Shown here piece after piece: positions 8,701-49,700 of a stretch of DNA of 64,000 nt. Below the pieces are notes generated by a model. It was not told the origin of the DNA and ran no database searches. It saw only the letters and a program-made list of their open reading frames with translations. The DNA is taken from IMG/VR virus record IMGVR_UViG_3300007770_001284, positions 1 to 64,000 of that record; one strand, 5' to 3'. Both the position numbers and the translations under genes were made by a program. Positions within the stretch are counted from its first letter, which is position 1; each line of letters opens with the position of its first letter.

Positions 8701-9789
8701 ATGGACGTCAAAACTCTCAAAACATGTATCGCAGCCCTTCCACCCAATATCGCTGCGCTAATGCGCGGTCCCACCGGTGTCGGTAAGTCACACGTAGCCA
8801 AGGATGTCGCAGATGTCCTCGGGCTCCCATTCCTCGATGTCCGCGGAAGCACCATGGACGAGGCTAAGGTCGGCGGAATCCCGGATTTCGAGACCTCAAA
8901 GGAACGTGGGGTGTCCACCTTCTGTCCTCCCTCTTGGTTCAAGCGCGCTTGCGATGAGCCAGTTCTCCTGATGCTCGATGAGCTCAACCGCTCGATGCCG
9001 CAGGTACAGCAGGCCTTCTTTCAGATTGTCCTGGACCGAGAGCTCGGTAACGACGCTGACGGTGTACCTCTGAGGCTCCACCCCGGAACGCGTATCATCG
9101 CGGCAGTTAACTGCGGTAACGAATACGATGTCAACGACATGGATCCCGCCCTCTTGCGGCGCTTCTGGGTCTGTGACCTCGAGCCTACCGTAGCCGACTG
9201 GATTGAGTGGGCAACCGAAGCCGGTCTCGATAAGGTCCTGGTGGAGTTCATCCAGCAGAACCCCGAGCACTGGAGAGTCGACCCCGCCGATGTGGAATCT
9301 GGAACGGTCGTTCCTACTCCCGCCTCCTGGCACCGTCTCAGCGACACTCTGGTCTCGGCCGGATTGGAGCCTGCAAAGATGGCTGGATTCGAGGTTAGCT
9401 CGACTACCTACCCTCTGACCATGGGCTTCGTAGGTACGGAAGCTGCGATCTCCTTCGTTGACTTCCTCAAGAACTACGAACGTAACATTACCGCAGAGGA
9501 TGTCCTGGCCGGTAAGGTCACGGCAGAAGATGTCAAGGAGCTCCCCGCTTCTCAGAAGACTGCCCTCATCGACAAGATCAGCACTCACGCTGCTGAGAAC
9601 AAGTGGAAGAAGGCAGAGGTCAAGAGGATCGCGGCGTTCGCAACCGAACTCGGTGGTGAGTTCCTGATTGCAACCTTCACGGCAGTGCAGAGAGCCAACA
9701 ACATGGCGAACCTGCTCCCCCTCAACAAGTTGATTGGAATGGAAGTAGTCTCCCTGGTCAACGATGCACGGGCAGTGTCGAAGGACTAA
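8701..9789 (+). CDS. MoxR-like / AAA_5 family AAA+ ATPase
   Basis: Walker A GPTGVGKS, Walker B LMLDELNR, sensor IAAVN, MDPALLRRF. Confidence 0.9.
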   Translation: MDVKTLKTCIAALPPNIAALMRGPTGVGKSHVAKDVADVLGLPFLDVRGSTMDEAKVGGIPDFETSKERGVSTFCPPSWFKRACDEPVLLMLDELNRSMPQVQQAFFQIVLDRELGNDADGVPLRLHPGTRIIAAVNCGNEYDVNDMDPALLRRFWVCDLEPTVADWIEWATEAGLDKVLVEFIQQNPEHWRVDPADVESGTVVPTPASWHRLSDTLVSAGLEPAKMAGFEVSSTTYPLTMGFVGTEAAISFVDFLKNYERNITAEDVLAGKVTAEDVKELPASQKTALIDKISTHAAENKWKKAEVKRIAAFATELGGEFLIATFTAVQRANNMANLLPLNKLIGMEVVSLVNDARAVSKD

Positions 9790-10096: not shown

Positions 10097-10118
10097 ATAA
10101 TTGAAGGTAGGAATGGAT

Positions 10119-31948: not shown

Positions 31949-32247
31949 AAAAGATCAAAGAAGAAATCGGTAGAAATTATAAAACAATCGACCCAACGCC
32001 TATTGACTTTTTCCACGATTCTCGAGTGAGCGTTGAAATATCTCCAACAGGTCTTGGGGACTTCGCTGTGTCGATTACAGCTCCTGAGTTAAAATATAAG
32101 TCTGGTATGAGAAAGTTCGGATCAGAGGAAGAAGCAACAGCGTTTGCAAGAAACGAGTATACTCGTCTGATCACGCAGATTAATAACGCAAATACGCTGG
32201 AAGAACGACTGTTTATTCGAGTTCTTCAACGTCTACAAAGAAAGTGA
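31945..32247 (+). CDS. hypothetical protein
   Basis: 100 aa; converges on the protease gene. Confidence 0.75.
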   Translation: MKKIKEEIGRNYKTIDPTPIDFFHDSRVSVEISPTGLGDFAVSITAPELKYKSGMRKFGSEEEATAFARNEYTRLITQINNANTLEERLFIRVLQRLQRK

Positions 32248-33030
32248 AGCTTTTCCAGCCAACACAAAATTTCTTAATGCTGGTGTTACGCATCCAATAG
32301 TGAATTCATCAAACGATATTGCTGCGCCGCTTATTATAGATATGATTTCGCCGTCTTCATTTAGTATTGGAGACCCGCTACTACCAGGCGCAGCTGGTAC
32401 AGAGAATATGTATATGTCTGAGACTTGTCCCACAAAGTATCCATCAAAGACTGGAACTGCTAATGGAACAGCCAAGTTGTGTGGCGATGACATGGTATAA
32501 ATTTTTTCGTGCAAGATAACATCATCATCTGCAACCTGTAGCTCTGGACCCAGGTTTGCATCTGCTATCAACATGCACAAATCGTTGTTTGAGTCAACGG
32601 CTATGATTGTGCCATATCCCTCTCTACCAAAGCCAGACTGAAGATGCATTTTATATTGTATGCTTAGATCTTTCGTTACTGGAGTTGAGTTTCCAGGCGC
32701 GCTACAAACATGTCCAGCTGTCAGGACCAGCGAACGACCATCATGCTCACCGATGATCACACCAGAACCGGTTGCAGATATTCCTGCAACTGGTTCTCCA
32801 GCAGGAGCGCAGTTTATTTTGTTATCATCGCAAGCAAGGTTGTAAAGATCAATGTCCTGTGTTACCATTATAAACGATTCAATAGGAAACTTATCAGATG
32901 CTGTCTGCACCGTTGGACTTCGAAGCACCGCCCCGAGCTTCATAGCATACATCAAGTTAGCAGCACCCAGCACTGTTGCTACAAAGCAAAGTGACAAAAA
33001 AACAGTACGGCTAGTCAAGAAATTTCGCAT
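32233..33030 (-). CDS. membrane-anchored trypsin-like serine protease
   Basis: GSGVII, LTAGHVC (His), NDL (Asp), PGSSGSP (Ser); N-terminal TM segment. Confidence 0.9.
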   Translation of the reverse strand: MRNFLTSRTVFLSLCFVATVLGAANLMYAMKLGAVLRSPTVQTASDKFPIESFIMVTQDIDLYNLACDDNKINCAPAGEPVAGISATGSGVIIGEHDGRSLVLTAGHVCSAPGNSTPVTKDLSIQYKMHLQSGFGREGYGTIIAVDSNNDLCMLIADANLGPELQVADDDVILHEKIYTMSSPHNLAVPLAVPVFDGYFVGQVSDIYIFSVPAAPGSSGSPILNEDGEIISIISGAAISFDEFTIGCVTPALRNFVLAGKASLSL

Positions 33031-33110
33031 GTGCCCCTATTAATATCTATTGGTCGGTTTCTTTTTAGTTCCGTACATAGCTAAATGGTTCTCCTGATAT
33101 TTGCGCAAGA

Positions 33111-33139
33111 TTGTAAATTACTAGAAAAGTCCTTACGAT
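33111..33139 (+). promoter_or_regulatory. sigma70-type promoter for the helicase
   Basis: TTGTAA-N17-TACGAT. Confidence 0.6.
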
Positions 33140-33155
33140 ATAATATGGATAACAT

Positions 33156-34784
33156 ATGAGCTTTACGTATAACGGGTACTTTCCGTATCCATCAATTAGA
33201 GACCAGCAGTCAGAAGCTGTCGACTTTATCTTAGATTCTTTCATTAATAAACAAAAGCGTTTTGTTATTTTGGAAGCAGGGACTGGTGTGGGGAAAAGTG
33301 CTGTAGGTCTCACGGTTGCTCGTTATATGACCGCGAATTTCTCGCCGAAGGGGGAGAGTGTTGCTGGTGGATATTTCCTCACAACTCAAAAAATCCTACA
33401 GCAACAATACATCAATGATTTTGGTGGAACAGCTGGAGCGATGAAGTCGATTATGTCTTCAACAAACTACAAGTGCAGCTATAACAAGAAGGCCACTTGT
33501 GCTGAAAGTTTACGAGCATTAAGGACGGCAGAAAAAGGATCACCGTTTTGGAGAGCATGCACGTTTAGTTGCAAGTATAGAAAAACAAAAGATGAATTTA
33601 TTCAGTCTTCCGAAGGCGTCACCAATTTTCCATACTTTCTGGCAGAAACGCAGTACGCGGGAAAGCTAAAACAGCGACAAGTTCTTGTGATTGATGAAGC
33701 TCACAACGCATGTGGAGAGCTCAGCAAATTTATTGAAATAACAATATCAGATAAATTTTGCAAGGACTTTCTAAAATTTCCGTTACCAACTGGGGGCACC
33801 CCCGCTCAATACATCAAGTGGATAAAAGACACGTACGTTCCAGCCATCGCTTCGAGGCTTAAGCATCTTGAGCAAATGATGGAAAAATATGTTGGTCTAA
33901 AAGACAAGATGCGTAGCGGAGAATTTGCTAACGTTGCAAAGAAATTCGAGATGTTAGATAAGCATGTATGTAAAATGCGGAGATTTCTAAAGCTATACTC
34001 TACTGATAACTGGGTGTTAAATGAAATTCCCGCAGATGGAAGGTCAGGAAGAAAAATAGAATTTAAGCCTATTGATGTTGCTCCCTTTTCAAGCGAAATG
34101 CTTCTAAATTATGGCGACCACGTTTTGCTTATGTCTGCCACGATATTAGACGCGGAAGCGTTTGTGGAAATGTTGGGTATACCCAAAGACCAGTACACCT
34201 TTATTTCTATGCCCACACCATTCCCGCCCGAGAATCGTCCTGTTTTTTATTCTGGTATGGGGAAAATGAGCTCTAAAACGATCGAAGAAACGTTACCCAA
34301 GATGGCACAGGCAGTAAAAGCGATTCTTGAGCAGCACAAGGGTGAGAAGGGTATCATTCACTGCCATTCTTACAGGATCGTGAATTATCTTAAAAAGAAC
34401 ATCCGCAGCAAGAGATTGCTTTCCCATAATTCTGATAATCGCGATGCGATATTAGAAAAGCATCGAAAATCAAAATCTGCAACGGTTTTGTTATCACCCT
34501 CTATGACAGAGGGTGTTGATTTGCACGGTGATTTAAGCCGGTTTCAAATCATATGTAAGATACCATACCCATATTTGGGCGATAAACTTATAAGAAAAAA
34601 AATGAATAAGTGGAAGTGGTGGTATCCACTGCAGACGGCCAAAACTATTGTACAAGGAACAGGCAGGTCTGTTAGATCGCTAGATGACACTGCTGTAACG
34701 TACATCTTAGATTCTGACTGGGAGCTTTTTTACAATCGAAATCGAAATATATTTCCAGATTCTTTTAGGGAGTCATTAAAATGA
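33156..34784 (+). CDS. DinG/XPD-family SF2 helicase
   Basis: Q motif IRDQQ, AGTGVGKS, DEAHN, MSAT, EGVD, QGTGRSVR; Cys cluster consistent with an Fe-S domain. Confidence 0.9.
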   Translation: MSFTYNGYFPYPSIRDQQSEAVDFILDSFINKQKRFVILEAGTGVGKSAVGLTVARYMTANFSPKGESVAGGYFLTTQKILQQQYINDFGGTAGAMKSIMSSTNYKCSYNKKATCAESLRALRTAEKGSPFWRACTFSCKYRKTKDEFIQSSEGVTNFPYFLAETQYAGKLKQRQVLVIDEAHNACGELSKFIEITISDKFCKDFLKFPLPTGGTPAQYIKWIKDTYVPAIASRLKHLEQMMEKYVGLKDKMRSGEFANVAKKFEMLDKHVCKMRRFLKLYSTDNWVLNEIPADGRSGRKIEFKPIDVAPFSSEMLLNYGDHVLLMSATILDAEAFVEMLGIPKDQYTFISMPTPFPPENRPVFYSGMGKMSSKTIEETLPKMAQAVKAILEQHKGEKGIIHCHSYRIVNYLKKNIRSKRLLSHNSDNRDAILEKHRKSKSATVLLSPSMTEGVDLHGDLSRFQIICKIPYPYLGDKLIRKKMNKWKWWYPLQTAKTIVQGTGRSVRSLDDTAVTYILDSDWELFYNRNRNIFPDSFRESLK

Positions 34785-35272
34785 AAGTTTATCAAAACGT
34801 TGAAGACCTACGAGCGTATATCGACGCCACTGGGTGGGGCGCAGATATCCCGGTCTATATTACCAGTGGTGGATTTGACCCACTTCACATTGGACACTTG
34901 CGGTGTATCTTGGAAACAGCTGATAAGGCAGATCTAGACGGTGGTGTTGTTGTGGTGGTTGTTAACGGCGACGGATTCTTACAGCGAAAAAAGGGAGCGG
35001 TGTTTATGCCAGAAGATGAGCGTTGCGAAATAATTGCAGGGATTCGGGGAGTCGACGCAGTCGTAAAATGGGACGATGGTAGCCAAACAGTCATCGGTGC
35101 GATTGAAGTGCTTAAGCCGAATTACTTCACGAAGGGTGGAGACAGGGCATCACCAGAAGATATTCCAGAATGGGATATATGTCAAGAAGTTGGGTGCAAA
35201 GTACTTTTTAACGTTGGTGGGAAGAAAATACAAAGCTCTTCATGGTTGGTTGGTAGCGATAGCACAAGGTGA
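34781..35272 (+). CDS. cytidylyltransferase / nucleotidyltransferase (HIGH family)
   Basis: SGGFDPLHIGH, VNGD, KGGDR. Confidence 0.9.
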   Translation: MKVYQNVEDLRAYIDATGWGADIPVYITSGGFDPLHIGHLRCILETADKADLDGGVVVVVVNGDGFLQRKKGAVFMPEDERCEIIAGIRGVDAVVKWDDGSQTVIGAIEVLKPNYFTKGGDRASPEDIPEWDICQEVGCKVLFNVGGKKIQSSSWLVGSDSTR

Positions 35273-35314
35273 AATATTTAAGTGATATAATATGGTTGGA
35301 GCTGGAGAACAATT

Positions 35315-35743
35315 ATGAAAAAAAAAGAGTTTCACGGTGCTGGATTTTTCTTAATAGATCCTGCAACGAATCTTATGTTGGCGCTCGTTAACAATCATGG
35401 GCTTTATGATTTTCCGAAGGGTGTTAAAGAGCCTGGGGAGCTACCATTAGAAACAGCAACAAGAGAATGCTTCGAAGAATGCTCTATATTAATAGAAGAA
35501 GAAGAGTTGATGAGCTGCGGTCCTTTTAGAGAAGGTGGACTAATAATGTTTTGCGCAGAAACGTCAAAGAAGCCAGTAATTTTCCCAAATGAAAAAACTG
35601 GTATCTTAGAGCATACGTCATATGAGTGGGTAAAACCAGAAGTGTTTAAAGAAAGTTGTGTTGGATATCTAAAGCCGATGCTTCAGAAAATTGTGTCATC
35701 GCTGGCAGACCAATCACACCCTCTAGTCTCGGACCATACTTAA
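35315..35743 (+). CDS. NUDIX hydrolase
   Basis: FPKG-x5-E-x7-RECFEEC Nudix box. Confidence 0.88.
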   Translation: MKKKEFHGAGFFLIDPATNLMLALVNNHGLYDFPKGVKEPGELPLETATRECFEECSILIEEEELMSCGPFREGGLIMFCAETSKKPVIFPNEKTGILEHTSYEWVKPEVFKESCVGYLKPMLQKIVSSLADQSHPLVSDHT

Positions 35744-35756
35744 GCACAGGGATAGC

Positions 35757-36923
35757 ATGTCAATTTTTCAAAGACACAAGACAATCGCTGATCGATCTGC
35801 TGGAGATCGATCCCGACATCGCAAAAAAATTGAGCGCGCTATTAAAGAGGGTATCTATAATATCGTTGCAGAAGAATCCATAATAGGAAAAGAGGGAAAG
35901 AAGAAATTTCGGATTCCTGTCCGCGGTATTAAGGAGTATCGTTTTGTCTATGGTGACAACGGATCAAAAAGAGTGGGCTCTGCGCAGGGTAAAGATGTCA
36001 AGCGTGGACAAGTGATCGGTAAAAAAGAGCAAGCAGAAGCTCCCGGAGAAGGCGAGGCTGGAAACCAGAAAGGAGAAGAGTATTACGAAGTAGAGCTTAC
36101 GCTAGACCAATTATCAGAATATCTTTTCAAAGATTTAGAGCTTCCAAACTTTGAAAAAAAGAAAAACATGAATGTGATATCGAAAAAGATCAAACGTCAT
36201 GGCTACAGAAGCAAAGGTATCCGACCACGATTAGACAAAAAAAAGACTGTAGTTGAAAAACTTAAGCGAAAAAATAAAAGCAAATTTATTTCAAGTGCAG
36301 AAAAGCAAGAAGAAGAAAGTTTCCCGTTCCACGATAATGACCTAAAGTATAGACACTACAAGGTTCACGAGAAAAAAAGCTCTAATGCAGTCATATTCTT
36401 CTTAATGGATATTTCAGGATCGATGTCAAAGCCAAAAAAATATCTAGCGCGAAGCTTCTTTTTTCTGTTATATCATTTTATTAGAGCGAGATATGATACA
36501 GTTGATTTAGTTTTTGTGGCTCATGATGTAGAGGCCTACGAAGTGACAGAAGAACAATTTTTTGGACGAGGATCTTCAGGGGGAACACTGGTATCCAGCG
36601 CGCTGAGCATGACAGATAACGTTATATCATCTAGATATCACCCTAATAGTTGGAATGTATATATTTTTCAGTGCTCTGATGGTGATAACTGGCCTACTGA
36701 TAACCAGAAGACGACTGAGCTAGCAAATCGGTTGCTTGAAAAAGTTCAATTTTTTGGATATTGTCAAATAGAGCCGAACGCAGAAAGAGCCGCTCACCCC
36801 AACCATGGCAGCTTACAAGAAGTGTATCAGCCTCTTATAGGACAAAAGTTTAAAACTGCTGAGGTCAGCTCAAAAGAGCATATCTGGCCAGCATTTAGAA
36901 CGTTTTTTGGAAATGATTTATGA
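35757..36923 (+). CDS. yeaH: YeaH/YhbH (DUF444) family protein
   Basis: DRSRHRKKI, FLMDISGSM, GGT.VSSAL, WNVYIFQCSDGDNW. Confidence 0.9.
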   Translation: MSIFQRHKTIADRSAGDRSRHRKKIERAIKEGIYNIVAEESIIGKEGKKKFRIPVRGIKEYRFVYGDNGSKRVGSAQGKDVKRGQVIGKKEQAEAPGEGEAGNQKGEEYYEVELTLDQLSEYLFKDLELPNFEKKKNMNVISKKIKRHGYRSKGIRPRLDKKKTVVEKLKRKNKSKFISSAEKQEEESFPFHDNDLKYRHYKVHEKKSSNAVIFFLMDISGSMSKPKKYLARSFFFLLYHFIRARYDTVDLVFVAHDVEAYEVTEEQFFGRGSSGGTLVSSALSMTDNVISSRYHPNSWNVYIFQCSDGDNWPTDNQKTTELANRLLEKVQFFGYCQIEPNAERAAHPNHGSLQEVYQPLIGQKFKTAEVSSKEHIWPAFRTFFGNDL

Positions 36924-38230
36924 GCGCTAATTTCTTAAAATCTCTTGAAGCGTGGGATGAAAAGATAGTCAAGCTAGCTAGCGAATACGGGTTAGATTGG
37001 TTTCCTATCATTTATGAAACCTGTGACTATTATGAGATGATTGGTAACATGGCATATCACGGCATGCCCACGCATTATAGGCATTGGAGCTTCGGGAAAT
37101 CATTCGAGCGTACCCATGCAATGTATGATGCTGGACTAGAGGGTCTTCCATACGAACTAATAATAAACAGCGATCCTTCGTTAGCCTACTTGATGGAAGA
37201 AAACCCATTGTACTTACAAGTTTTGATTATGTGCCACTGCGTTGGTCACTCAGATTTTTTTAAGAACAATATTACTTTTGCAAATACAGGGCCAGACCAT
37301 ATTCTATTACGCATGCGCAATGCAAAGAGATTTGTCGACGGTCTAATAGAAGATCCTTCAATCGGTGTACAAAGGGTAGAAGAAATTCTAGATGCTGCTC
37401 ATGCCCTTTCTCTTCAAGTGCCAAGACGTTATAAAAAATATGTGACGCAGAAAGAACAAAAAATGCACTTAATTCATGATATCAAAAACGGTAAATATGA
37501 GAATGCTGACATAACACCCAGCCCTAAAGCAATACCGGTTAGTCCAGAGCAAAATATTTTGGCATTCCTCGCCGAGTGCAGTCCTCATCTCGAAGACTGG
37601 GAGCGGGAGCTATTACACTTCGCGCGCGAGGATGCTGAATATTTCATGCCACAAATTAGGACAAAGATCATGAATGAAGGGTGGGCGTCATTTTGGCATT
37701 ACAGATTGATGCACGACCTTCAGCTCCCAACCTCGATGCATATTCCTTTTCTCAAAATGCACAATGAAGTTACAAAACCTCACCTGGGGAGCATTAACCC
37801 TTACCATTTGGGATTTTATCTTTTTAGAAAAATAGAAGAGCGCCACGGGCTAAAAGAATGTTTCATCGCAAGAGAAGCATTAAATGATGAATCGTTTATA
37901 AGACAATATTTAACAGAGGAAGATTGTGTTAATTTAAACTTGTTTACGTTTGGACTGGACAAAAAAAGCTATGTAATAGAGGATGTATCGGATGAACCTG
38001 GATGGAAATCAGTGAAAGAAAACCTAATCAAACAGGTTTCTGCGAATAATATTCCTTCAATTATAGTTGACAGAGTGGACAGCGCAAACATACTGTGCTT
38101 GAAACACGATCATGACGGCCGCGATTTGGAGCTAGAGTATGCAGAATCAGTTATTGAACACATCACAACGTTATGGGGGGATGTAGTTAAACTTGATACG
38201 TTCATTGAAGATGAGCCATTTGAGATTTAA
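36920..38230 (+). CDS. spoVR: SpoVR/YcgB family protein
   Basis: GMPTHYRHWSFGK, YELIINSDP, HCVGHSDFFKNN, TKIMNEGWASFWH, NPYHLG. Confidence 0.93.
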   Translation: MSANFLKSLEAWDEKIVKLASEYGLDWFPIIYETCDYYEMIGNMAYHGMPTHYRHWSFGKSFERTHAMYDAGLEGLPYELIINSDPSLAYLMEENPLYLQVLIMCHCVGHSDFFKNNITFANTGPDHILLRMRNAKRFVDGLIEDPSIGVQRVEEILDAAHALSLQVPRRYKKYVTQKEQKMHLIHDIKNGKYENADITPSPKAIPVSPEQNILAFLAECSPHLEDWERELLHFAREDAEYFMPQIRTKIMNEGWASFWHYRLMHDLQLPTSMHIPFLKMHNEVTKPHLGSINPYHLGFYLFRKIEERHGLKECFIAREALNDESFIRQYLTEEDCVNLNLFTFGLDKKSYVIEDVSDEPGWKSVKENLIKQVSANNIPSIIVDRVDSANILCLKHDHDGRDLELEYAESVIEHITTLWGDVVKLDTFIEDEPFEI

Positions 38231-38244
38231 TACGGAGCAAAAAT

Positions 38245-40179
38245 ATGTCAAAGAATAAGAGCAAATATCTTGATATCATTACTAGTCAAAGAAAAAAGAA
38301 GTCTTCTGAAAAGTTTGAGGGAAGTTTGCTTGACTATTTTGCACTCTTAGAAAAGAATCCATCGTTAGCTGACCGCGCGCATAAGAGGCTTTACGATGTT
38401 ATAACGTCACACGGGGTCTCAGTACTTGAAGACGAAGACCCACGAAAGTACAAGCTTTTTGATGGTGACAATGTTAAGATTTATGATTATTTCGCTGATG
38501 AATTTTTTGGAATGGAAAATGTTATTTCAAAAATCTTAAGATACCTGAGGTCTGCTGCGCATAATGGTGAAGAGTCCAGACAGGTGTTATTATTAATGGG
38601 TCCAGTTGGTGCCGGGAAATCTGCTTTAACAGAGCATATCAAAGCTTCGCTTGAAAGTGTAAAATATTATCACCTAAAAGACGATCCGCAGAGAGGCGAT
38701 CCACTACAGCTAGTTCCGCGATCGCTACGGAAACGTTTCAGCAAGATGCTTAACGTTTCAATTGAGGGAGATATTTCTCCTGTTGCCAGGTTCTTATTGT
38801 TCGAAAAGTACGAGGGGTCTTACGAAGAATTTGAAGTTGTTGAAACAACATTCTCTCAACGTGCTCGTCGGGGGATCGCAACAGTACCGCCAATGGATGC
38901 AAACAGCCAAGATGTTTCAGTGTTAATTGGGTCAGAAGACATTTCGAAGCTAGACAAATATTCTGAAGATGACCCCCGGGCGCTATCCCTAAATGGTGCG
39001 TTTAACGTCGGTAACAGAGGGCTGGTCGAACTTGTGGAGGTCTTTAAGAACGAAATTGAGTTTCTCCATACTATCATTACTGCAACACAGGAGAAGAGGA
39101 TTCCTTCCCCCGGAAAGCATGACATGCTACACTTCGACGGTGTTATTCTTGCTCATTGTAATGAAGCCGAATGGAACCGGTTTCAAAGCGAACATACAAA
39201 CGAGGCAATATTAGATAGAATTGTTAAAGTTGAAGTACCGTATGTTCTAGAGCTAGCGCAAGAAATGAAGATATATCAAAAAATTCTTGATCGTTCCCAT
39301 TTTTCTTCTCATATCGCGCCTCATACACTTCGTGTGGCGTCAATGTTTTCTATTCTTAGTCGGCTCCATGCTAGCCAAAAGTGCGATCTTCTTACGAAGC
39401 TTAAGATTTATAACGGCGAAGATGTTGTTGAAAAGGGTCGTGTCAAAAAAATTGATATTAAAGACCTAAGAGACGAAGCTCCGCATGAGGGAATGCAGGG
39501 TATTTCAACGCGCTTTATAATGAAGGCTATCGATAATGCTTTGAGCGATTCTGATAAAGATTTTATTACTCCTGTTTCTATTCTTGACTCATTAGTGAAG
39601 CAGGTCAAAGAGCAACTTACTGATTTTGATTTTCAAAACCACTGTCTAGATCTGCTCAGAAATACCGTACGTGACGAGTATCTTCGTATGCTGGAAAACG
39701 AAATTGCAAAAGCGTTTATAACAGCATACGAAGAACAAGCACAGGCTATTTTCGAAAATTACCTCGACAATGCCGAAGCCTTCACAACTCACTCTAAAAT
39801 GAAAGACAAAGTAACAAAGGAAGAGCGCACCCCTGACGAAGAATTTATGAAAGCAATTGAGGGAGCGATCGGGGTGAGCAATTCTGGAAGAGAGGGCTTC
39901 AGGGCTGACGTTACCGCATATATGTTTTCAAAAATGAGACGTGGCGAAGTTGTAGACTATACATCTTATGAACCGTTAAAAGACGCAATCGAAACATATC
40001 TCATCACATCTGTGAAAGATCTGGCACGAATTGTTACAAAATCAAAAACAAGAGATGACGACCAAAAACAAAAGTACTCAAGCATGGTACAAACGCTGAT
40101 CGACGAATATGGTTATACAGCTGCGTCCGCGGAAGAGATCTTGGTGTTCGCCAGCAATAACTTATGGAGAGATAGCTAA
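38245..40179 (+). CDS. prkA: PrkA/YeaG AAA+ serine protein kinase
   Basis: FFGME, LMGPVGAGKS, GNRGLVELVEVFK, NEAILDR, GISTRF. Confidence 0.93.
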   Translation: MSKNKSKYLDIITSQRKKKSSEKFEGSLLDYFALLEKNPSLADRAHKRLYDVITSHGVSVLEDEDPRKYKLFDGDNVKIYDYFADEFFGMENVISKILRYLRSAAHNGEESRQVLLLMGPVGAGKSALTEHIKASLESVKYYHLKDDPQRGDPLQLVPRSLRKRFSKMLNVSIEGDISPVARFLLFEKYEGSYEEFEVVETTFSQRARRGIATVPPMDANSQDVSVLIGSEDISKLDKYSEDDPRALSLNGAFNVGNRGLVELVEVFKNEIEFLHTIITATQEKRIPSPGKHDMLHFDGVILAHCNEAEWNRFQSEHTNEAILDRIVKVEVPYVLELAQEMKIYQKILDRSHFSSHIAPHTLRVASMFSILSRLHASQKCDLLTKLKIYNGEDVVEKGRVKKIDIKDLRDEAPHEGMQGISTRFIMKAIDNALSDSDKDFITPVSILDSLVKQVKEQLTDFDFQNHCLDLLRNTVRDEYLRMLENEIAKAFITAYEEQAQAIFENYLDNAEAFTTHSKMKDKVTKEERTPDEEFMKAIEGAIGVSNSGREGFRADVTAYMFSKMRRGEVVDYTSYEPLKDAIETYLITSVKDLARIVTKSKTRDDDQKQKYSSMVQTLIDEYGYTAASAEEILVFASNNLWRDS

Positions 40180-40433
40180 TGTCAAAAATTGGGTTTAGCG
40201 AGGGGCTATTAGTGTTTGCAATAGCTGCATTATGGCACAATCAGATACTGGCCATTATTGCGATGAGTTTGGCAATTTTCGGTGCAGTCGTTCGTGTATC
40301 AATAGAGCAAAATCAAAAAGCTAAAGAAAACGAAGCAAAGGCGGAGGCGGCAAAATTATTGAATGAACAAGTTCAAGAAGTCGGCGATGCCATTGGCAGC
40401 GTTTTTAGGAAAAAAAAGAATAATTTTCACTGA
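40179..40433 (+). CDS. small membrane protein
   Basis: two hydrophobic helices followed by a charged tail. Confidence 0.7.
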   Translation: MSKIGFSEGLLVFAIAALWHNQILAIIAMSLAIFGAVVRVSIEQNQKAKENEAKAEAAKLLNEQVQEVGDAIGSVFRKKKNNFH

Positions 40434-40441
40434 GGCTTCTT

Positions 40442-41779
40442 ATGGACCTGTACGCCTCAGTTGTTGCCGGCGAAGAAGCTGATAAAGTTACTCGTGCAGC
40501 TGTAAATTCTATCGATCACCTTATAAATGATTTGCGTGACAATCGAAATTCAATAATTCTTGGTCATAGATTGCATACACTTGGGTGGTCTGATTCTTTT
40601 CGTCTTCTCATTGACGGCTTAGATGCATGTCCACTAGTATACCGAAATTTAATATTAAATTCAGCTCACACTATATATCGTCAGTGCTCACTGGCTGTTC
40701 CGCTTTACCTTGTTACACTACAAGAATTATTAAAAAATCACAAAAGAGAAGAGCTAACAAAAAAGCTTAGAGCTACTATTGATAAGCAAGTTCTTCATAA
40801 AAAAAGAGTTTCTTCTATAGCTGCGAAAGATGTATGGAAAAAAACAGTCCATGATGAATTAACAAACCAGATTTTGTGTGTTTTATCAGATGCAATTGAT
40901 TCAGCGGGGGCACTGGGCGCTATAGAGCTAAAAAGAGACAAGTCACTTCGTGTAGAGGTTGACGAGGGTGTTGTTGTGTCTGCATCTATCCACCCTCAAT
41001 TTGCCGCTAGGGTTTCTAGTTTTCTTAGATTAGAAGACTGCAAGGTTGTTGTCATTGACGGAGCTGTTACAAGCGTCGGTGAATTGAACAGGCTGTTAGT
41101 ACGTGCAAATGAGAGCAAGCTAAAAATTGCAATATTTGCCAGCCAGTTCTCTGATGAAGTGCTGAATACGCTGGTAGTGAATTGGCAGCAGGGAAAGCTA
41201 ATAGTCGTTCCTGCAATTTTCAATGAAGATCTTGATGATATTAACCAGGTTAGAGATCTTGCTTCTACTGCTGGTGTTATACCAATTTCAACAGACGTAG
41301 GTAATTCATTGTCATCACTTGATATCGATGAAGTTAAAGAGATGAAAGGAGTGATATTTGATAACATACGAAAGCAGTGTGAAATTATTTTAGACACCGA
41401 TAGTCTGGGAAGAGTTCTTACATTGAGAGCGGAATTACAGACAAAGAGAAGTAAAGAAGAAGTTGAAGACATTAAAGACGTTTTGGCTAGTCGCTTAACC
41501 AAGCTAACAAGCAGAAAAACAACAATCTATATTCCCTGCGAATCTGATGAGTTCGGGCTAGTTAAAGATAGAGCTGCTAGCTTATTTACATTTGTGAAGT
41601 GTTGCGCAAATGAAGGTGTTATCCACACTCACGAAATCTATAAAGATGTGGGTGCCAGTACGCTCCCACAGCTGCCTATTTTTTTACCAGCTTACTCTGC
41701 ACACCTTTCTATTCTTAAAGCAATTACAGACTGTGAACAGATACATAAAATTGGTGCATTAATTTTAGTGGATCGGTGA
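40442..41779 (+). CDS. divergent Cpn60/GroEL-like protein
   Basis: apical-domain-like VVVIDG...EVLNTLVVN...DLA...RLTKL; lacks GDGTT; 445 aa. Confidence 0.7.
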   Translation: MDLYASVVAGEEADKVTRAAVNSIDHLINDLRDNRNSIILGHRLHTLGWSDSFRLLIDGLDACPLVYRNLILNSAHTIYRQCSLAVPLYLVTLQELLKNHKREELTKKLRATIDKQVLHKKRVSSIAAKDVWKKTVHDELTNQILCVLSDAIDSAGALGAIELKRDKSLRVEVDEGVVVSASIHPQFAARVSSFLRLEDCKVVVIDGAVTSVGELNRLLVRANESKLKIAIFASQFSDEVLNTLVVNWQQGKLIVVPAIFNEDLDDINQVRDLASTAGVIPISTDVGNSLSSLDIDEVKEMKGVIFDNIRKQCEIILDTDSLGRVLTLRAELQTKRSKEEVEDIKDVLASRLTKLTSRKTTIYIPCESDEFGLVKDRAASLFTFVKCCANEGVIHTHEIYKDVGASTLPQLPIFLPAYSAHLSILKAITDCEQIHKIGALILVDR

Positions 41780-42252
41780 TGCCGAAAGAGCTAGAAGAAA
41801 AACATTGGTTCAATGGAAGCTCTTCGCCAGTGAGTTTTTGTGATATAATTGAAAGCATTAAAGAGCACGCTGAATTCGAATTGTTTGTCGGGTGTGATTC
41901 TCATAAGATCAGTGAAAAATATATTTTTGCTACAGTGATTGCGTTGCACAAACCCGGTAAGGGGGGACATTTTTTCTTTTATAGGAGAAAAGTAAAAGAT
42001 AAGCGCTTTGACAATATTAAGATAAGACTGCTGGAAGAGACAGAGTTGGCCATCAGCGTGGCAAGATTAGTAAGAGAGTATTTCCCAACAAAGGCTGTTG
42101 CCGTGCATCTCGACATTAACGCTGATCCGTGTTACCGATCAGCAGCAGTATTACGACCAGCTACATCATACGTAATTTCTTCAGGGTTTCAGGTAGCGAT
42201 TAAGCCTCTATCTTGGGCTTCTTCAAGCCTGGCGGATGCTTTTGCAAAATAA
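41776..42252 (+). CDS. RNase H-like YkuK (DUF458) family protein
   Basis: LFVGCDS, RLLEETELAI, VHLDIN, IKPLSWASSSLAD. Confidence 0.85.
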   Translation: MMPKELEEKHWFNGSSSPVSFCDIIESIKEHAEFELFVGCDSHKISEKYIFATVIALHKPGKGGHFFFYRRKVKDKRFDNIKIRLLEETELAISVARLVREYFPTKAVAVHLDINADPCYRSAAVLRPATSYVISSGFQVAIKPLSWASSSLADAFAK

Positions 42253-42296
42253 TTTGTTTACTTGCTAAGCATCAGCCTTAAATTTGTTGAAGGATT

Positions 42297-42518
42297 ATGG
42301 AGGGAAATATGAACCCACAAGAAGTGCGAGACTTAGTTCATAATATTATTAATTTTACAGGTGATGAAGTTGGCAGGAAGCTTGTTGAAACCACAACTGT
42401 ATCGTGGAGTGAAAATAATAATGTTGATGTGTTGACCAACGAACAAGCGCAAGCAATATTGGCGGCATTAACAGAGACTATAAGACAGTCAGCATTCACA
42501 ATTTTGTCAAAGTATTAA
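42297..42518 (+). CDS. hypothetical protein
   Basis: 73-aa ORF (start may be ATG 42309). Confidence 0.7.
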   Translation: MEGNMNPQEVRDLVHNIINFTGDEVGRKLVETTTVSWSENNNVDVLTNEQAQAILAALTETIRQSAFTILSKY

Positions 42519-42526
42519 TTGCTAAA

Positions 42527-42991
42527 ATGCGTGGTATAAAGCACATCATAGAGTGTAGATGTATTTTGCCTACGTTAAAAAATAAGAAAGACCCACCATT
42601 ACATCAGTTTGTAGTTTTTTCTGTTATAGATGATAATGACAAGGTATGCGAAAAATATGCTCAATGTAATAATTGCGGCGTAGTACACAAAGTATACGAT
42701 TTATGCAAATCAGAAATTTTAGCATCAAGAGAAGAATTAAAGAGCGCGCTTACAATTGAAGATATTAAATTTACACTTCCAGAATCTGTCGCTGGCATTT
42801 TAGAAAATTATGAATGTGACTTACCAACATACGAGCATGTAAAATTTATGTACGATTTTAATGTAAAGGGCGAATTTACAATTTTGACAAAGGAACAAGA
42901 AGGCTCCAAAATAGAAGGAAAGATCCTTAGGTACAAAGAGGGAAAAACATTTTCCATAGAACCCTTTGTCTCCACCACTGAAATAAAATGA
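42527..42991 (+). CDS. hypothetical protein, possible zinc binder
   Basis: ECRC and CNNC. Confidence 0.75.
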   Translation: MRGIKHIIECRCILPTLKNKKDPPLHQFVVFSVIDDNDKVCEKYAQCNNCGVVHKVYDLCKSEILASREELKSALTIEDIKFTLPESVAGILENYECDLPTYEHVKFMYDFNVKGEFTILTKEQEGSKIEGKILRYKEGKTFSIEPFVSTTEIK

Positions 42992-43248
42992 AGACTATTA
43001 CCGAAAAAATCAAAGCAAAAAAAGATGCGGAATGGCTAAACGAAACCAAAGAATCTCGTGAAATTACAAAAGAAATTTTAAAATACGGTGTGTCTCAATC
43101 ACAGATAAAAACCATCATTAAGTTATTGGCGCTCGAACTTGAAGATGTTCCAACAATGAAAGCAATTTCAGAAATTTTATCTGAAAATGTTAACGAGCCG
43201 TTAGATACAGTTAATATACTTCAACCGGGAGGGAAAACAAATGAGTGA
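42988..43248 (+). CDS. hypothetical protein
   Basis: 86 aa; ATGA-coupled. Confidence 0.75.
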   Translation: MKTITEKIKAKKDAEWLNETKESREITKEILKYGVSQSQIKTIIKLLALELEDVPTMKAISEILSENVNEPLDTVNILQPGGKTNE

Positions 43249-43435: not shown

Positions 43436-43467
43436 TCAAATTCTACCGTAGTATATCCTTTTAAGAG

Positions 43468-43492
43468 GGAGGGCTTTGCCCTCCTTTTTTTT
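43468..43492 (+). terminator. Rho-independent terminator between convergent genes
   Basis: GGAGGGC-TTT-GCCCTCC followed by a long T run. Confidence 0.85.
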
Positions 43493-43512
43493 GTTTTTTT
43501 GAAACGCAATAC

Positions 43513-46724: not shown

Positions 46725-49700
46725 ATGGCAAAAGACTTTCGCACAAATCAGATTAGAACCTCAACGATCATCGGTTCCGGATCGCTCAGCACAGCAACAC
46801 CATCAGGTCATCAGGTTGGGTTAGTAATATGTAGCGGCTCGGGCGCATCGGATTTCGATGGAGGATATGTAGACCCCAATATACTCAAGTTCGTAGGCGA
46901 TGATGTCTGGATGGTCGTTAGTGGTACAGCTGACCATACTTCGTATATGGCAGAACAAAAACCTGCTGGTGGGTCTGTCTTGTTCCTGGGTGACGTCGTA
47001 GTTAGCGGAACGCTGTGGGCTGAAAGAAGCGTCATCGAAGTTGACAACCAAGTTATCGGTGACATGATGGTACCGAACGCGTTGGTGGCCGGCACCGAAC
47101 CTGAGGATCTAGCGGGTGGGGTAGCAGCCAAACTTCTTGTCGATCCGTTCACAACGAACGCAGGAGGAACTGGAACGCAGGATGGTACAGTATCGTTCAA
47201 TATCGTTACAGCGCCCGGCGCTGGTGTCGCTTGGAGATACGACGGCACATTAAAGACAGACGTTTTCTTCCACGTTTCAGGTAGCCGTGACGTAAGGAAT
47301 ACTAACAATAGGGGTCTTGCACTGTTCGACGGTGACGTGCACGTCTCAGGTAACTTCAGTGTCGATGAAGGCGGTACCTTCACCACAGACATTATTCTCG
47401 ATAACGATACGACCGCCCCTCCTGTCATAAAGCATGCTAAGGATTACGGCGGCAGTGGTGAGGTGGTCTATAGCGAGTACGCGATTAGAAACGTGGACTC
47501 CGGTCCGAGCTGGTGGCATCTCGACATTGTACACTCTGGAGCGAATGCTTCTCCCAGCGGCATAGACTCTGGCATAAGACTGAAGGTAAACGACGGTGCT
47601 ACAGATCTTGCAGATCGATCGGCATTCGTTGTATCAGCATCAGGTGATATTGCCATTGACCCAGGGAAAGAGATAAGGTTCGCTGGCAGAAGCGGCGGGT
47701 ATGGACCACATATCGAATATAATGTGCCAGATAGTTCCTCACCGACCAATTACGCCAATGGGCAACTTGCCTTTAAGCATTATTATTCATCACTTGACAC
47801 CCCAACATCATTCAACTTTACGGGTGGTGTAGTAACAGCGTCGAATGGAATTTACTTACCTGATGCGGATACATTTGGAGGTGATTATATCGCCTCGGCC
47901 CGAGGGCAAACTCGGGGAATTATGTTCGCGGGTAGCTCTGGAGACGACGGTGATGGAGTCGGCCCAGGCGATGCAGGGATATATTACAACGAAGATAACC
48001 TAGTAAATGAAGTCTTGGGCGGAACTTATAACACTCTGTGCATGGTCGCGTCGAATACCGGCTCCAACATCCATATCGAAGCTGGAAATTATTTAACCTT
48101 ACGTGCCGGAACGCGCGCTGAGCCGGGTGATATCGAGATCAGTGGTTCGAATGACATGTGGCTCAGGGCCCTCGGGTCACTTAGGGCAGATGTTGAAACA
48201 AATATACTCATGGTTCCGCAAGGTTACACAACTTTTGCGGGGGATCTTGCCGCTGTTCCTACCCCACAAGGTGACGTCAAGTTCTTTGTTTCAGGTGCGG
48301 TTGGTGGAAAACATGGGGGATCAAGAAGCATAGCGCTATTCGGTGGGGACCTTGTCACGAGTGGAGTCCTTTATGTTGATGGTACCACAGGCGACGGCGG
48401 CGCTCCTGTTTACGGTGGTTCTGCTCTGGTCCTGCGTGGGGGTATTACATGGGATATGAGCGGATCGACGGATCCCGATGGAGATTCCTGGATATGGGAA
48501 AATAGTGACGATCTCTTTGTGAAGGGGAGAGACCACCTCTATCTTCATGCTTCAGGTACTGCTGGTTCTGGTACCGTAACAGTGTCTGGATCGGTTGCTG
48601 ATGTCTATGCCGCGGCGGGTAGTGCTACGGTAAGCGGTTCTAATCAAGTTATCCTCCTCGCTGGTAATGATGTACTCTCTACAGCGGCCGATGACCATGT
48701 GTTCATAAGCGGTGAAACGGCATTCTTTGCAGGTGACGACAAGTCGGTTCCTGTCGCTGCTAGCGATGTTCACTTCTTAGTCTCTGGCTCGCTAAATACA
48801 AGACATACCTCAACGAGGGGTACAGCATTATTCACCGGTGATCTTGTCACGAGTGGAGTCCTTTATGCTGACGGTGCTATCACTGATGGTGGCGCACCTG
48901 GATATGGTGGATCCAGTTTGGTCCTCCGTAACGGAATCGCATGGGATGTATCGGGTTCTGCTGGAGACAATGGTCAAGCCTGGTTGTGGGAATTTGGCGA
49001 TGTTCTTTACTTGAAGGGCAAAGATGGTGTAACTCTCCACGCATCTGGTACAGACGGTTCTGGAACAGCAAATATAAGCGGATCAATTGTCAATGTTTAT
49101 GCAGGCGCAGGGAGTGCTACTTTAAGCTCATCTCTAGATACCTTCATCAAGTCTGGCGATGATATTGTACTGTCGGCATCTGACAAGATCTTCATGTATC
49201 CCGAAGGCGGAAAGATCTACGCGGCAGAGAATACAGCTGTTGGCTACAATCAGTGCACAATTGATTTAACAGTTCCTGCCTTCCAACTGAGAGCCTCAGA
49301 CTCAGATTATTTCCAGATTGATGTGGGCGCTGATGGTAGCACCATATTCACTACGGTGGATGGAGACGCCAATGCGGCGAACTTGACCATGAACGTCGAT
49401 GGTGCCGTTGACATAAACGCAGTGAGTAATGTGACACTTGACGTTTCGGCCGGCCCTATCTCAATCGGAACTACTGCAGTTGCGCAACAAATAACAATCG
49501 GTGGAGACACCAGCACCCGGACCGAGATTGAGCTGAACGCGATAGCTATAGACGTTAATGCCGGAAGCGGCGGTGTAGACATCGGAGCGGGTGGTGACAT
49601 AACGTTAAGCGGCTCCGGCGATCTGGAGCTAATCGGAACCACCGGCGTTACGATTCGGGGTGATGTATCACTAACAGACAACCTAACTGTATTTGGTGAT

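What the first reader, a model, noticed from the sequence alone, without database searches (positions are those of the whole stretch)
35757..40179. Complete, rearranged YeaH-SpoVR-PrkA stress/dormancy operon in a phage
Seen: all three genes are intact with catalytic motifs, in the order yeaH-spoVR-prkA. Known: in bacteria this module (usually prkA/yeaG first) is linked to nitrogen starvation, stationary phase and sporulation. Inference: the phage controls host dormancy or development, or repurposes an AAA+/vWA chaperone-kinase to keep starved cells productive.
Basis: partly seen in the sequence, partly recalled or inferred. Interest (0 to 1): 0.65.

Follow-up and report, generated by a model that had tools for sequence, protein, structure and literature searches.

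The report
Phage-borne PrkA–YeaH–SpoVR stress module
A large family of giant marine phages carries an intact, strongly conserved copy of a three-gene bacterial starvation module, which more likely breaks down host proteins to feed phage production than controls sporulation; phages with this module were already known.

Summary
Window 35757-40179 holds three intact, tightly packed genes: YeaH/DUF444 (vWA domain, MIDAS motif intact), SpoVR, and PrkA (AAA+ ATPase motifs intact).

The contig is a genuine 255-kb jumbo myovirus, not a chimera. The same gene order occurs in 78 of 78 informative related viral contigs, under strong purifying selection (dN/dS about 0.04) and with phage-like base composition.

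All three proteins are closest to Bacillota and Thermodesulfobacteriota homologues (PrkA 56%, YeaH and SpoVR 42-47% identity). Those bacteria always have prkA first. The phage order is not unique, though: Thermus phages (known since phiYS40) and a deep subfamily that includes bacterial chromosomes share it.

Recent papers report no kinase activity in purified PrkA. In E. coli, YeaG is required for bulk protein breakdown during starvation. So "kinase" and "sporulation control" are poor readings. The best reading is an ATP-driven protein-turnover machine that keeps nutrient-poor hosts productive; this is inferred, not shown.

A new lead: the SpoVR model resembles zinc-metallopeptidase catalytic domains, and an intein sits inside SpoVR's universally conserved NEGWA|S motif in one relative. 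This lead is weakly supported.

The parts
35757..36923 (+). yeaH-like gene (DUF444). The N-terminal region is conserved but poorly modelled; the C-terminal part is a vWA domain with an intact MIDAS motif (D218, S220, S222, T277, D308/D310).
   Evidence: Pfam E 1e-111. MIDAS residues invariant in 28 phage and bacterial sequences. AF2 model with vWA domain at pLDDT 85-95; Foldseek hits to vWA domains including Rea1 MIDAS and NorD. AGGGA Shine-Dalgarno-like motif upstream.
36920..38230 (+). spoVR-like gene. Its start overlaps the yeaH stop (ATGA), which suggests translational coupling. It carries the family-universal H106-x3-H110 and N252-E253-G-W-A...H260 motifs.
   Evidence: Pfam SpoVR E 5e-117 plus SpoVR_C. 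Universal residues. AF2 model pLDDT 84.6, pTM 0.83. VIA-align top hits are zincin metallopeptidase domains, Z up to 11.
38245..40179 (+). prkA/yeaG-like gene: an AAA+ ATPase domain (residues 27-380) plus a PrkA C-terminal domain (383-635). Walker A is GPVGAGKS at residues 119-126.
   Evidence: Pfam E 3e-132 and 2e-74. Matches solved structure 9xip at E 3e-91 over residues 21-638. ATPase residues invariant in 82 clade members. GGAG motif 11 nt upstream of the start.
33156..35743 (+). Co-directional upstream genes: helicase, cytidylyltransferase-like and NUDIX. Only 13 nt separate NUDIX from yeaH, so these probably share a transcription unit with the module (inferred).
   Evidence: Pfam. This synteny recurs in many related loci but varies. 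A TATAAT-like box lies in the 33031-33155 divergent intergenic region.
40179..43248 (+). Co-directional downstream genes: orf84 (whose start overlaps the prkA stop), orf445, an RNaseH-like gene and small ORFs. Their presence varies across the clade.
   Evidence: orf445 is not a decayed yeaH or spoVR copy.
43463..43499 (+). First strong intrinsic-terminator-like hairpin downstream of the module (12-bp stem followed by a T-run). Probable end of the transcription unit (inferred).
   Evidence: sequence seen.

Best explanation
The three genes form one functional unit that this jumbo-phage lineage has kept for a long time. PrkA is an ATP-driven AAA+ motor. YeaH is a vWA/MIDAS adaptor. SpoVR is a partner whose predicted fold resembles zinc metallopeptidases.

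By analogy with the cellular YeaG (SpdA) system, the phage most likely uses this unit during infection to unfold and turn over host cytoplasmic proteins. That would release amino acids and energy, or remodel the proteome, so that a nutrient-limited marine host can still produce a very large phage.

Shown here: the genes are intact; the clade conserves them; selection is purifying; the origin is cellular; the functional motifs are preserved; PrkA and SpoVR co-occur in genomes.

Inferred: that the three proteins form a complex, that they cause proteolysis, that the targets are host proteins, and that SpoVR supplies a peptidase or substrate-handling activity.
For: 1. Function of homologues.
- E. 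coli yeaG is required for non-specific, starvation-induced degradation of cytoplasmic proteins, which fuels new synthesis (PMC13684143).
- PrkA is an ATPase whose Walker A lysine is essential in vivo (PMC9512850).
- Pure PrkA has neither kinase nor protease activity. It is a clade III AAA+ protein like FtsH/YME1, with a pore loop, and it oligomerises with ATP (PMC13001217). So any proteolysis needs a partner.

2. The triad behaves as a unit.
- The three genes are adjacent in 78 of 78 informative phage loci and in 77 bacterial and metagenome loci.
- In 151 Bacillota genomes, PrkA occurs in 55, SpoVR in 55, and both in 54.
- The three gene trees are congruent.

3. Selection. dN/dS is about 0.03-0.04 for all three genes. 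All ATPase and MIDAS residues, and the universal SpoVR residues, are kept.

4. SpoVR.
- The model is confident.
- The exhaustive structural search returns almost only zincin peptidase catalytic domains: M1, M3, M4, M9, M30, M32 and M61, at Z 11.0 down to about 6.
- The universal H-x3-H and (N/H)-E-G-(W/F)-A motifs resemble the M1 HExxH and NEGFA motifs.
- hhalign places NEGWA on the M1 zinc-binding Glu helix.
- In relative L045, a LAGLIDADG intein sits exactly between NEGWA and S257. Inteins typically occupy functional sites (general knowledge).

5. Context. The module lies among nucleotide-metabolism and starvation-type genes (NUDIX, PhoH, RNaseH-like), in a marine phage seen in several seawater metagenome studies.
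Against: - No experiment addresses the phage proteins.
- The SpdA paper does not mention YeaH or YcgB at all (0 occurrences), and the mechanism of YeaG-dependent proteolysis is unknown.
- The reported PrkA protease activity is disputed.
- The zincin reading of SpoVR is weak. Foldseek finds nothing. The profile search of PDB finds nothing. hhalign probability is 1.7%. The Glu of HExxH is absent. The tool warns that helical models can reach Z of about 13 by chance. I could not inspect the model coordinates.
- In Thermus phage Lalka8 the module sits between the portal and minor-head genes and TerL, which hints at a morphogenetic role there.
- The host is unknown.
- Expression is unproven. Two libraries labelled metatranscriptomic hold fragments of all three genes, but the tool flags them as probably DNA.
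Confidence: 0.45

Rival explanations
1. Regulatory takeover. The module acts on a few specific host regulators, not on bulk protein. This would block or steer the host's stationary-phase, persistence or dormancy programme so the cell stays permissive.
For: prkA and yeaG mutants have pleiotropic regulatory phenotypes: altered sigK and sporulation gene expression, osmotic stress survival, RpoS-linked survival, and metabolic heterogeneity under nitrogen starvation. Authors of PMC13001217 suggest non-enzymatic regulatory effects. Dormancy is a plausible barrier to phage production (general knowledge).
Against: No specific target is known in any organism. The likely hosts do not sporulate. E. coli data point to broad, non-specific turnover. 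A dedicated three-protein ATP-driven machine kept at dN/dS of about 0.04 fits either reading, so nothing here favours this one.
Confidence: 0.2
2. Phage-directed chaperone or maturation machine. The AAA+/vWA pair, with SpoVR, assembles, activates or processes phage proteins (for example virion or replication complexes), as MoxR-vWA systems do for their client enzymes.
For: AAA+ plus vWA/MIDAS pairs are classic maturation chaperones; the YeaH vWA model matches the NorD and Rea1 MIDAS domains. In Thermus phages the module lies next to portal, minor head and terminase genes. The same window encodes a second AAA+ (AAA_5) gene next to a fused metallopeptidase-VWA (DUF2201) gene, so this phage uses such machines more than once.
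Against: In this clade the module lies about 100 kb from the head and tail genes, among metabolism genes. PrkA is not a MoxR-type AAA+: there are no AAA_5 or AAA_3 hits, and it is assigned to clade III in PMC13001217. The cellular homologues work without any phage client.
Confidence: 0.12
3. Counter-defence. The module degrades or sequesters host immunity or stress proteins.
For: Only general plausibility. Jumbo phages carry many anti-defence genes, and an unfoldase-protease could remove defence proteins.
Against: There is no link to any defence system. The module's cellular homologues are housekeeping stress genes. I ran no PADLOC search, so this is untested, not rejected.
Confidence: 0.05
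4. Artefact: host DNA assembled into a viral contig, or decaying cargo without function.
For: None found. One database phage record (Enterobacter phage LAU1) does begin with host yeaG-yeaH, so such artefacts exist.
Against: The same arrangement is found in at least 155 IMG/VR contigs. A second contig with an identical PrkA and all 12 tested neighbouring genes (L015) and Logan contigs from other samples cover the junctions. GC and GC3 equal those of neighbouring phage genes. dN/dS is about 0.04.
Confidence: 0.01

Closest known systems
Bacillota/Thermodesulfobacteriota prkA-yhbH(yeaH)-spoVR operon (Clostridium, Caloramator, Petroclostridium, Syntrophobacteria MAGs)
   Same: The same three families, with the highest identity of any cellular group: PrkA 55-58%, YeaH 42-47%, SpoVR 42-44%. 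Lengths are the same and all motifs are kept. The PrkA and SpoVR trees group the phage clade with these bacteria (SH-aLRT 99 and 94); the YeaH tree leaves the relationship unresolved.
   Different: The gene order is prkA-first in 77 of 77 complete loci, whereas the phage order is yeaH-spoVR-prkA. The phage clade branches outside the sampled bacteria, not inside them, so the capture is old and the donor cannot be named.
E. coli YeaG(SpdA)-YeaH plus unlinked YcgB
   Same: The same families. This is the system with the best functional data: starvation survival and bulk proteolysis.
   Different: Only 32%, 28% and 32% identity. It is a different deep subfamily. ycgB is unlinked. It is under RpoS/NtrC control, which a phage copy would not share.
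Thermus phages phiYS40, TMA, phiLo, MN1 and Lalka ('conserved bacterial protein/vWA' - SpoVR - 'serine kinase')
   Same: A phage-borne triad in the same yeaH-spoVR-prkA order. This shows phage carriage is already on record.
   Different: About 30% identity and a distant part of the PrkA tree. They belong to a subfamily with a shorter YeaH (about 330-380 aa) that also occurs on bacterial chromosomes. They lie beside head and packaging genes. A common origin of the shared gene order is not rejected (AU test p = 0.26).
Ralstonia jumbo phage RsoM2USA and huge metagenomic phages LR745206 and LR756504
   Same: Jumbo phages that carry all three genes.
   Different: They are of the proteobacterial YeaG type (62-64% identical to E. 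coli YeaG) and in the canonical order. They represent separate acquisitions.
FtsH/YME1 (AAA+ fused to an M41 zinc metallopeptidase) and MoxR-AAA+ plus DUF2201 (metallopeptidase-VWA) pairs
   Same: What it may work like: a clade III AAA+ motor (as PMC13001217 reports for PrkA) combined with a zincin-type domain and, in the DUF2201 systems, a VWA domain. An AAA_5 gene next to a DUF2201 gene is present in this same window.
   Different: There is no sequence-level homology of SpoVR to M41, M1 or DUF2201_N. The parts are three separate proteins. The catalytic Glu of HExxH is missing. This is a resemblance only, not membership.

Membership tests
PrkA/YeaG family | N-terminal AAA_PrkA domain plus PrkA C-terminal domain, full length | tested here: met
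   Pfam E 3e-132 (profile positions 2-357 of 358) and 2e-74 (1-255 of 255). Solved structure 9xip at E 3e-91.
PrkA/YeaG family | Intact ATPase site: the Walker A Lys (equivalent to B. subtilis K108, essential in vivo), acidic Walker B-like residues, and conserved Asn and Arg residues | tested here: met
   K125, S126, E262, E265, N306, R325, R373 and R423 are invariant in 82 clade members and 75 bacterial homologues.
PrkA/YeaG family | ATP hydrolysis and ATP-dependent oligomerisation | not testable with these tools
   Needs purified protein.
Ser/Thr protein kinase (the historical annotation) | Kinase P-loop and catalytic residues; phosphotransfer activity | not tested
   I did not search for kinase motifs. 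The literature reports a degenerate P-loop and no kinase activity in two orthologues. I do not file the gene as a kinase.
YeaH/YhbH (DUF444) vWA proteins | DUF444 profile match and a vWA fold with a complete MIDAS motif (DxSxS, T, D) | tested here: met
   Pfam E 1e-111. MIDAS residues invariant. Foldseek probability 1.00 to vWA domains.
SpoVR/YcgB family | SpoVR and SpoVR_C profile matches and the family's universal residues | tested here: met
   Pfam E 5e-117 and 1e-07. All 27 near-universal residues are present.
Conserved prkA-yeaH-spoVR operon | The three genes adjacent and co-directional | tested here: met
   Gaps of -4 nt and 14 nt between the genes. Conserved in 78 of 78 informative loci.
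Conserved prkA-yeaH-spoVR operon | Canonical order with prkA first | tested here: not met
   The order here is yeaH-spoVR-prkA. The canonical order holds in 77 of 77 nearest cellular loci.
SpdA starvation-induced protein degradation system | Required for bulk, non-specific turnover of cytoplasmic proteins in starved cells | not testable with these tools
   This is a functional definition (PMC13684143). It needs pulse-chase or proteomic experiments.
Zincin/gluzincin metallopeptidases (for SpoVR) | HExxH motif on the active-site helix | tested here: not met
   Only H106-x3-H110 is found. Position 107 is C, V or A, never E, in the sequences shown.
Zincin/gluzincin metallopeptidases (for SpoVR) | Third zinc ligand Glu on a following helix (the NEGFA-like motif in M1) | tested here: inconclusive
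   E253 within (N/H)-E-G-(W/F)-A is universal, and hhalign aligns it to the M1 Glu helix. But it lies 143 residues after H110, against about 19 in M1. I could not measure 3D proximity.
Zincin/gluzincin metallopeptidases (for SpoVR) | Zincin fold or detectable homology | tested here: inconclusive
   VIA-align: nearly all of the top 50 hits are zinc-peptidase-fold proteins or uncharacterised entries, Z 11.0-5.8, 160-205 residues aligned. Foldseek: none at E <= 1e-3. hhalign probability 1.7%. PDB profile search: none.
MoxR-vWA chaperone systems | AAA+ partner of the MoxR type (AAA_3 or AAA_5) | tested here: not met
   PrkA gives no AAA_3 or AAA_5 hit. A separate true AAA_5 gene lies at 8701-9789.
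Viral 'sporulation' auxiliary metabolic gene | The host sporulates and the gene acts in sporulation | not testable with these tools
   The host is unknown. Capsid relatives infect hosts that, to my knowledge, do not sporulate. The label rests only on the B. subtilis gene name.

The most novel reading that the evidence does not exclude
SpoVR is the missing peptidase (or substrate-gripping pseudo-peptidase) of the PrkA/YeaG(SpdA) system. The triad would then be a split, FtsH-like, ATP-dependent protease: a clade III AAA+ motor, a vWA/MIDAS adaptor and a divergent zincin. A cosmopolitan clade of marine jumbo phages would deploy its own copy to digest the host proteome for building blocks. That would be a virus-encoded counterpart of the starvation-induced bulk proteolysis that PMC13684143 compares to autophagy.
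Probability: 0.25. Interest if true: 0.85.

Novelty: new member of a known kind. Interest (0 to 1): 0.5.

Why it matters
The PrkA/YeaG-YeaH-SpoVR/YcgB triad is one of the most widespread bacterial stress modules still lacking a mechanism. Only in 2026 was YeaG tied to bulk starvation proteolysis, while pure PrkA proved to be neither a kinase nor a protease.

A compact phage version that is strongly selected and abundant in nature gives three things:
- An independent argument that the three proteins act together.
- A concrete, testable candidate (SpoVR as a zincin-like partner) for where the proteolytic chemistry could sit.
- A corrected ecological reading. Viral 'spoVR' counted as a sporulation gene in marine viromes (PMC8940887) more likely marks phages that recycle host protein in nutrient-poor water.

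If true, this changes how such auxiliary genes are scored in ocean virome surveys.

Tried and rejected
- DNA search of the module against 50,697 phage records: no match.
- Complex prediction of PrkA residues 1-600 with full-length YeaH: score 0.00, 'no answer'. This is not evidence either way.
- ESM Atlas feature search for SpoVR with its own families excluded: nothing usable. The Atlas fold search returned only the SpoVR cluster itself.
- PDB sequence and profile searches for YeaH and SpoVR: nothing relevant.
- Weak Pfam scan of 28 SpoVR sequences: a single hit to the putative zinc peptidase DUF5700 (E 0.0065, one member). Too thin to use.
- Test of whether orf445, downstream of prkA, is a decayed yeaH or spoVR left over from a tandem duplication: no similarity.
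- Test that the gene-order change arose independently of the Thermus-phage subfamily. The PrkA tree suggests it did. But in the concatenated tree the phage-plus-Bacillota node has only 52% support, and the AU test does not reject one clade of all rearranged modules (p = 0.257). This is left open.
- A literature search for 'YeaG' plus 'cryo-EM' returned only noise. I found no paper for PDB 9xip.
- dN/dS on random pairs was saturated (dS > 1.5); I redid it on close pairs.
- Model coordinates are not exposed to the Python box, so I could not measure the H106/H110/E253 geometry.

Full report
OBSERVATION

The window carries three back-to-back ORFs on the + strand at exactly the reported coordinates: 35757-36923, 36920-38230 and 38245-40179. 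Pfam assigns them to DUF444/YeaH (E 1e-111), SpoVR plus SpoVR_C (5e-117) and AAA_PrkA plus PrkA_C (3e-132 and 2e-74), each over nearly the whole profile.

The genes are tightly packed. Only 13 nt separate the upstream NUDIX gene from yeaH. The yeaH stop and spoVR start overlap (ATGA). A 14-nt gap precedes prkA, and the next ORF starts on the prkA stop. Shine-Dalgarno-like GGAG or AGGGA motifs precede yeaH and prkA. The consensus promoter and terminator scans are no richer than shuffled sequence. The first convincing terminator hairpin is at 43463-43489, so the module probably lies in a long transcript that starts near the divergent intergenic region at 33031-33155. That is inferred.

IS IT A PHAGE, AND IS THE JUNCTION REAL?

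The window is the first 64 kb of a 254,743-bp IMG/VR virus record. The record is 94% coding, with 226 of 248 ORFs on one strand. It encodes:
- TerL (140492-142093)
- a T4-type major head protein (149802-151709)
- two tail sheath paralogues
- a baseplate wedge protein
- an SbcCD-like nuclease
- a large DNA polymerase
- five tRNAs and a tmRNA

The closest cultured capsid relatives are Flavobacterium phage immuto, Microcystis phage Mel-JY01 and Rhodothermus phage RM378.

The module's GC (0.40) and GC3 (0.34-0.39) equal those of the neighbouring helicase, PhoH and TerL genes. A second IMG/VR contig (L015) has an identical PrkA and all 12 tested neighbouring genes. Contigs from other seawater samples tile the region without mismatches. 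A chimera is excluded.

HOW WIDESPREAD, AND IS IT UNDER SELECTION?

PrkA homologues at 63-100% identity occur in at least 155 IMG/VR contigs, up to 361 kb long, and in thousands of marine metagenome proteins. In 80 fetched loci the order yeaH-spoVR-prkA is found in 78. The two exceptions are cut by contig ends. Flanking genes vary.

Close pairs give dN/dS of 0.038, 0.033 and 0.039 for the three genes, with dS near saturation. All ATPase residues of PrkA, the YeaH MIDAS residues, and the SpoVR residues that are near-universal across the whole family are kept.

ORIGIN

E. coli YeaG, YeaH and YcgB are only 32%, 28% and 32% identical to the phage proteins. Thermus-phage and RsoM2USA copies are about 30% identical.

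A scan of one genome per prokaryotic species finds the closest cellular PrkA in Clostridia and other Bacillota, and in Syntrophobacteria and Thermodesulfobacteriota MAGs, at 55-58% identity. YeaH is 42-47% and SpoVR 42-44% identical. All 77 complete genome and metagenome loci checked have the order prkA-yeaH-spoVR.

Trees of PrkA (127 rows), SpoVR and YeaH (34-35 rows), and the concatenated set all recover the marine phage clade as monophyletic, with SH-aLRT 99-100. It sits beside, not inside, the Bacillota/Thermodesulfobacteriota group. So the three genes were captured together, long ago, from a lineage of that type. No donor can be named.

Other phage copies are separate acquisitions. RsoM2USA and two huge metagenomic phages carry the proteobacterial YeaG type in the canonical order. 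Thermus phages belong to a distant, fast-evolving subfamily.

THE 'REARRANGEMENT'

The phage order is a cyclic permutation of the order in its nearest relatives, but it is not unique. All Thermus phages examined have it. So do members of their subfamily found in cellular or plasmid-like contexts, and three complete Bacillota chromosomes (G010, G061, G103).

The PrkA tree places canonical-order lineages around the phage clade, which favours an independent permutation. In the concatenated mixture-model tree, however, the phage-plus-Bacillota node has only 52% support. An AU test does not reject a single clade of all rearranged modules (p = 0.257). The history of the order therefore remains open. 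No remnant of a tandem duplication is left downstream.

WHAT IT DOES

The historical names mislead.
- B. subtilis PrkA binds and hydrolyses ATP through its Walker A lysine and showed no kinase activity. A slow casein-degrading activity was reported (PMC9512850).
- Highly purified B. anthracis PrkA has neither kinase nor protease activity. Its authors model it as a clade III AAA+ protein like YME1/FtsH with a pore loop, and it oligomerises with ATP (PMC13001217).
- In E. coli, yeaG (renamed spdA) is required for RpoS-dependent, largely non-specific degradation of cytoplasmic proteins during carbon starvation. This supplies amino acids and ATP for new synthesis (PMC13684143). That paper does not mention YeaH or YcgB.

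Together these results point to an AAA+ motor that needs partners.

The partners are obvious from genomics. The triad is adjacent in phages and bacteria alike. In 151 sampled Bacillota genomes, PrkA and SpoVR are each present in 55 and co-occur in 54.

YeaH is a vWA/MIDAS protein. Its model matches Rea1-MIDAS and NorD, both of which are partners of AAA+ motors.

A NEW LEAD ON SpoVR

An AlphaFold2 model built from 28 phage and bacterial sequences is confident (pLDDT 84.6, pTM 0.83). Foldseek finds no solved relative.

The exhaustive VIA-align search returns a list made almost entirely of zincin metallopeptidase catalytic domains, at Z 11.0 down to about 6, with 160-205 residues aligned over model residues 1 to about 340. 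It includes:
- M1 aminopeptidases and LTA4 hydrolase
- M3 oligopeptidases
- thermolysin and LasB
- M30, M32, M61, M9 and DPP III families
- ACE

Across the entire family, including E. coli YcgB and the Thermus phage copies, three motifs are invariant, in this order:
- G75-x3-E79, on a strand in the model
- H106-x3-H110, on the helix that follows the next strand (residues 88-92)
- (N/H)-E253-G-(W/F)-A...H260

This recalls the GAMEN, HExxH and NEGFA motifs of the M1 family (GAMEN is from general knowledge; the other two were seen). hhalign aligns NEGWA with the M1 Glu helix.

In one clade member (L045), a LAGLIDADG intein is inserted exactly between NEGWA and the following Ser. Inteins typically occupy functionally critical sites (general knowledge).

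Several points count against this lead:
- The Glu of HExxH is absent.
- The H-x3-H and NEGWA motifs are 143 residues apart.
- hhalign probability is 1.7%.
- No sequence search links SpoVR to peptidases.
- The tool warns that helical models can reach this Z by chance.

I rate a true zincin-like fold at about 0.6, and an active peptidase at about 0.3.

BEST EXPLANATION AND RIVALS

Most likely (0.45), the phage triad is an ATP-driven protein-turnover machine, related to the cellular SpdA system. It would be expressed with metabolism genes (helicase, NUDIX, RNaseH-like, PhoH) to recycle or remodel host protein so that a nutrient-limited marine cell can build a 255-kb phage.

Rivals:
- Narrow regulatory control of host dormancy (0.2).
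- A chaperone or maturation role for phage proteins, suggested by the head-gene context in Thermus phages (0.12).
- Counter-defence (0.05).
- Artefact (0.01).

Expression is not shown. Two seawater libraries whose source is recorded as metatranscriptomic contain short contigs matching all three genes at about 97-100% identity, most of them with no or one mismatch, but the tool flags them as probably DNA.

NOVELTY

Phage-borne PrkA, SpoVR and DUF444 genes are already on record:
- Thermus phage phiYS40 and its relatives.
- RsoM2USA (PMC8504454).
- PHROG families 19072, 35217 and 22605.
- spoVR as the most abundant 'sporulation' auxiliary gene in an oxygen-minimum-zone virome (PMC8940887).

This locus is therefore a new member of a known kind. 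What this analysis adds:
- The triad is a conserved feature of a very large marine jumbo-phage clade.
- It has a Bacillota-like, ancient origin.
- The sporulation and kinase reading is corrected.
- SpoVR may be a zincin-like protein.

In the 13 papers that contain both 'SpoVR' and 'metallop...', neither word appears in a title or abstract, and the one I read does not make this link. I cannot exclude that the link is noted elsewhere.

Noticed in passing
window 8701-9789 and 10101-11537: A second AAA+/vWA/metallopeptidase system lies in the same window: a MoxR-type AAA_5 ATPase next to a protein with DUF2201_N ('putative metallopeptidase') plus a DUF2201 VWA-like domain. Its GC (0.57) and GC3 (0.66-0.68) are far above the genome average of 0.44, which suggests a more recent acquisition.
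   Followed up: partly
G000 228165-228509 (-), i.e. L013 4165-4509: Phage-encoded tmRNA (Rfam RF00023, 124 bits). ARAGORN reads the tag peptide as ANNNNHFEYALAA. Five tRNAs (Met, Lys, Asn, Arg, Leu) lie at 244-255 kb.
   Followed up: partly
L045 3255-5816: In one related phage, SpoVR is 853 aa because a LAGLIDADG intein is inserted exactly between the universally conserved NEGWA and the following Ser.
   Followed up: yes
proteins P0130, P0157 and other 1000-1570-aa hits: Many distant PrkA homologues carry one or two LAGLIDADG inteins inside the AAA+ domain.
   Followed up: partly
L098 (JBBAUR010000009.1) and L099 (PBIO01000025.1): Two contigs of about 90-100 kb, binned into Bdellovibrionota and Halobacteriovorax MAGs, carry the phage-type module. 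L099 also has the phage synteny from helicase to PhoH. These are either misbinned phage contigs or a hint at the host.
   Followed up: no
window 46725-53171 and 53171-58606: Two giant adjacent ORFs of 2148 and 1811 aa in a GC-richer stretch (about 0.50). They have no family match except a weak BclA_C-like C-terminus on the second, so they may be fibre or surface proteins.
   Followed up: no
G000 155117-158260 and 158288-161377: Two tandem tail sheath paralogues of about 1040 aa each.
   Followed up: no
window 32233-33030 (-): A trypsin-like serine peptidase gene on the minority strand, divergent from the helicase-to-module gene block.
   Followed up: no
L185 (Enterobacter phage LAU1, MN688132.1 1-3308): This database 'phage' record begins with yeaG-yeaH next to tail genes. 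It looks like host flank of a prophage, not phage cargo.
   Followed up: partly
L089 5271-5997; L002 3028-4878: Some relatives have extra DNA between spoVR and prkA: a 727-nt stretch with no open frame as translated in L089, and a 616-aa ORF of unknown function in phiYS40.
   Followed up: no
G127, G136, G039 (Bacillota genomes): Some Bacillota genomes carry two PrkA/SpoVR sets. Judging by the domain E-values and SpoVR lengths, the two sets look like different subtypes, but I did not check their gene order or subfamily.
   Followed up: no
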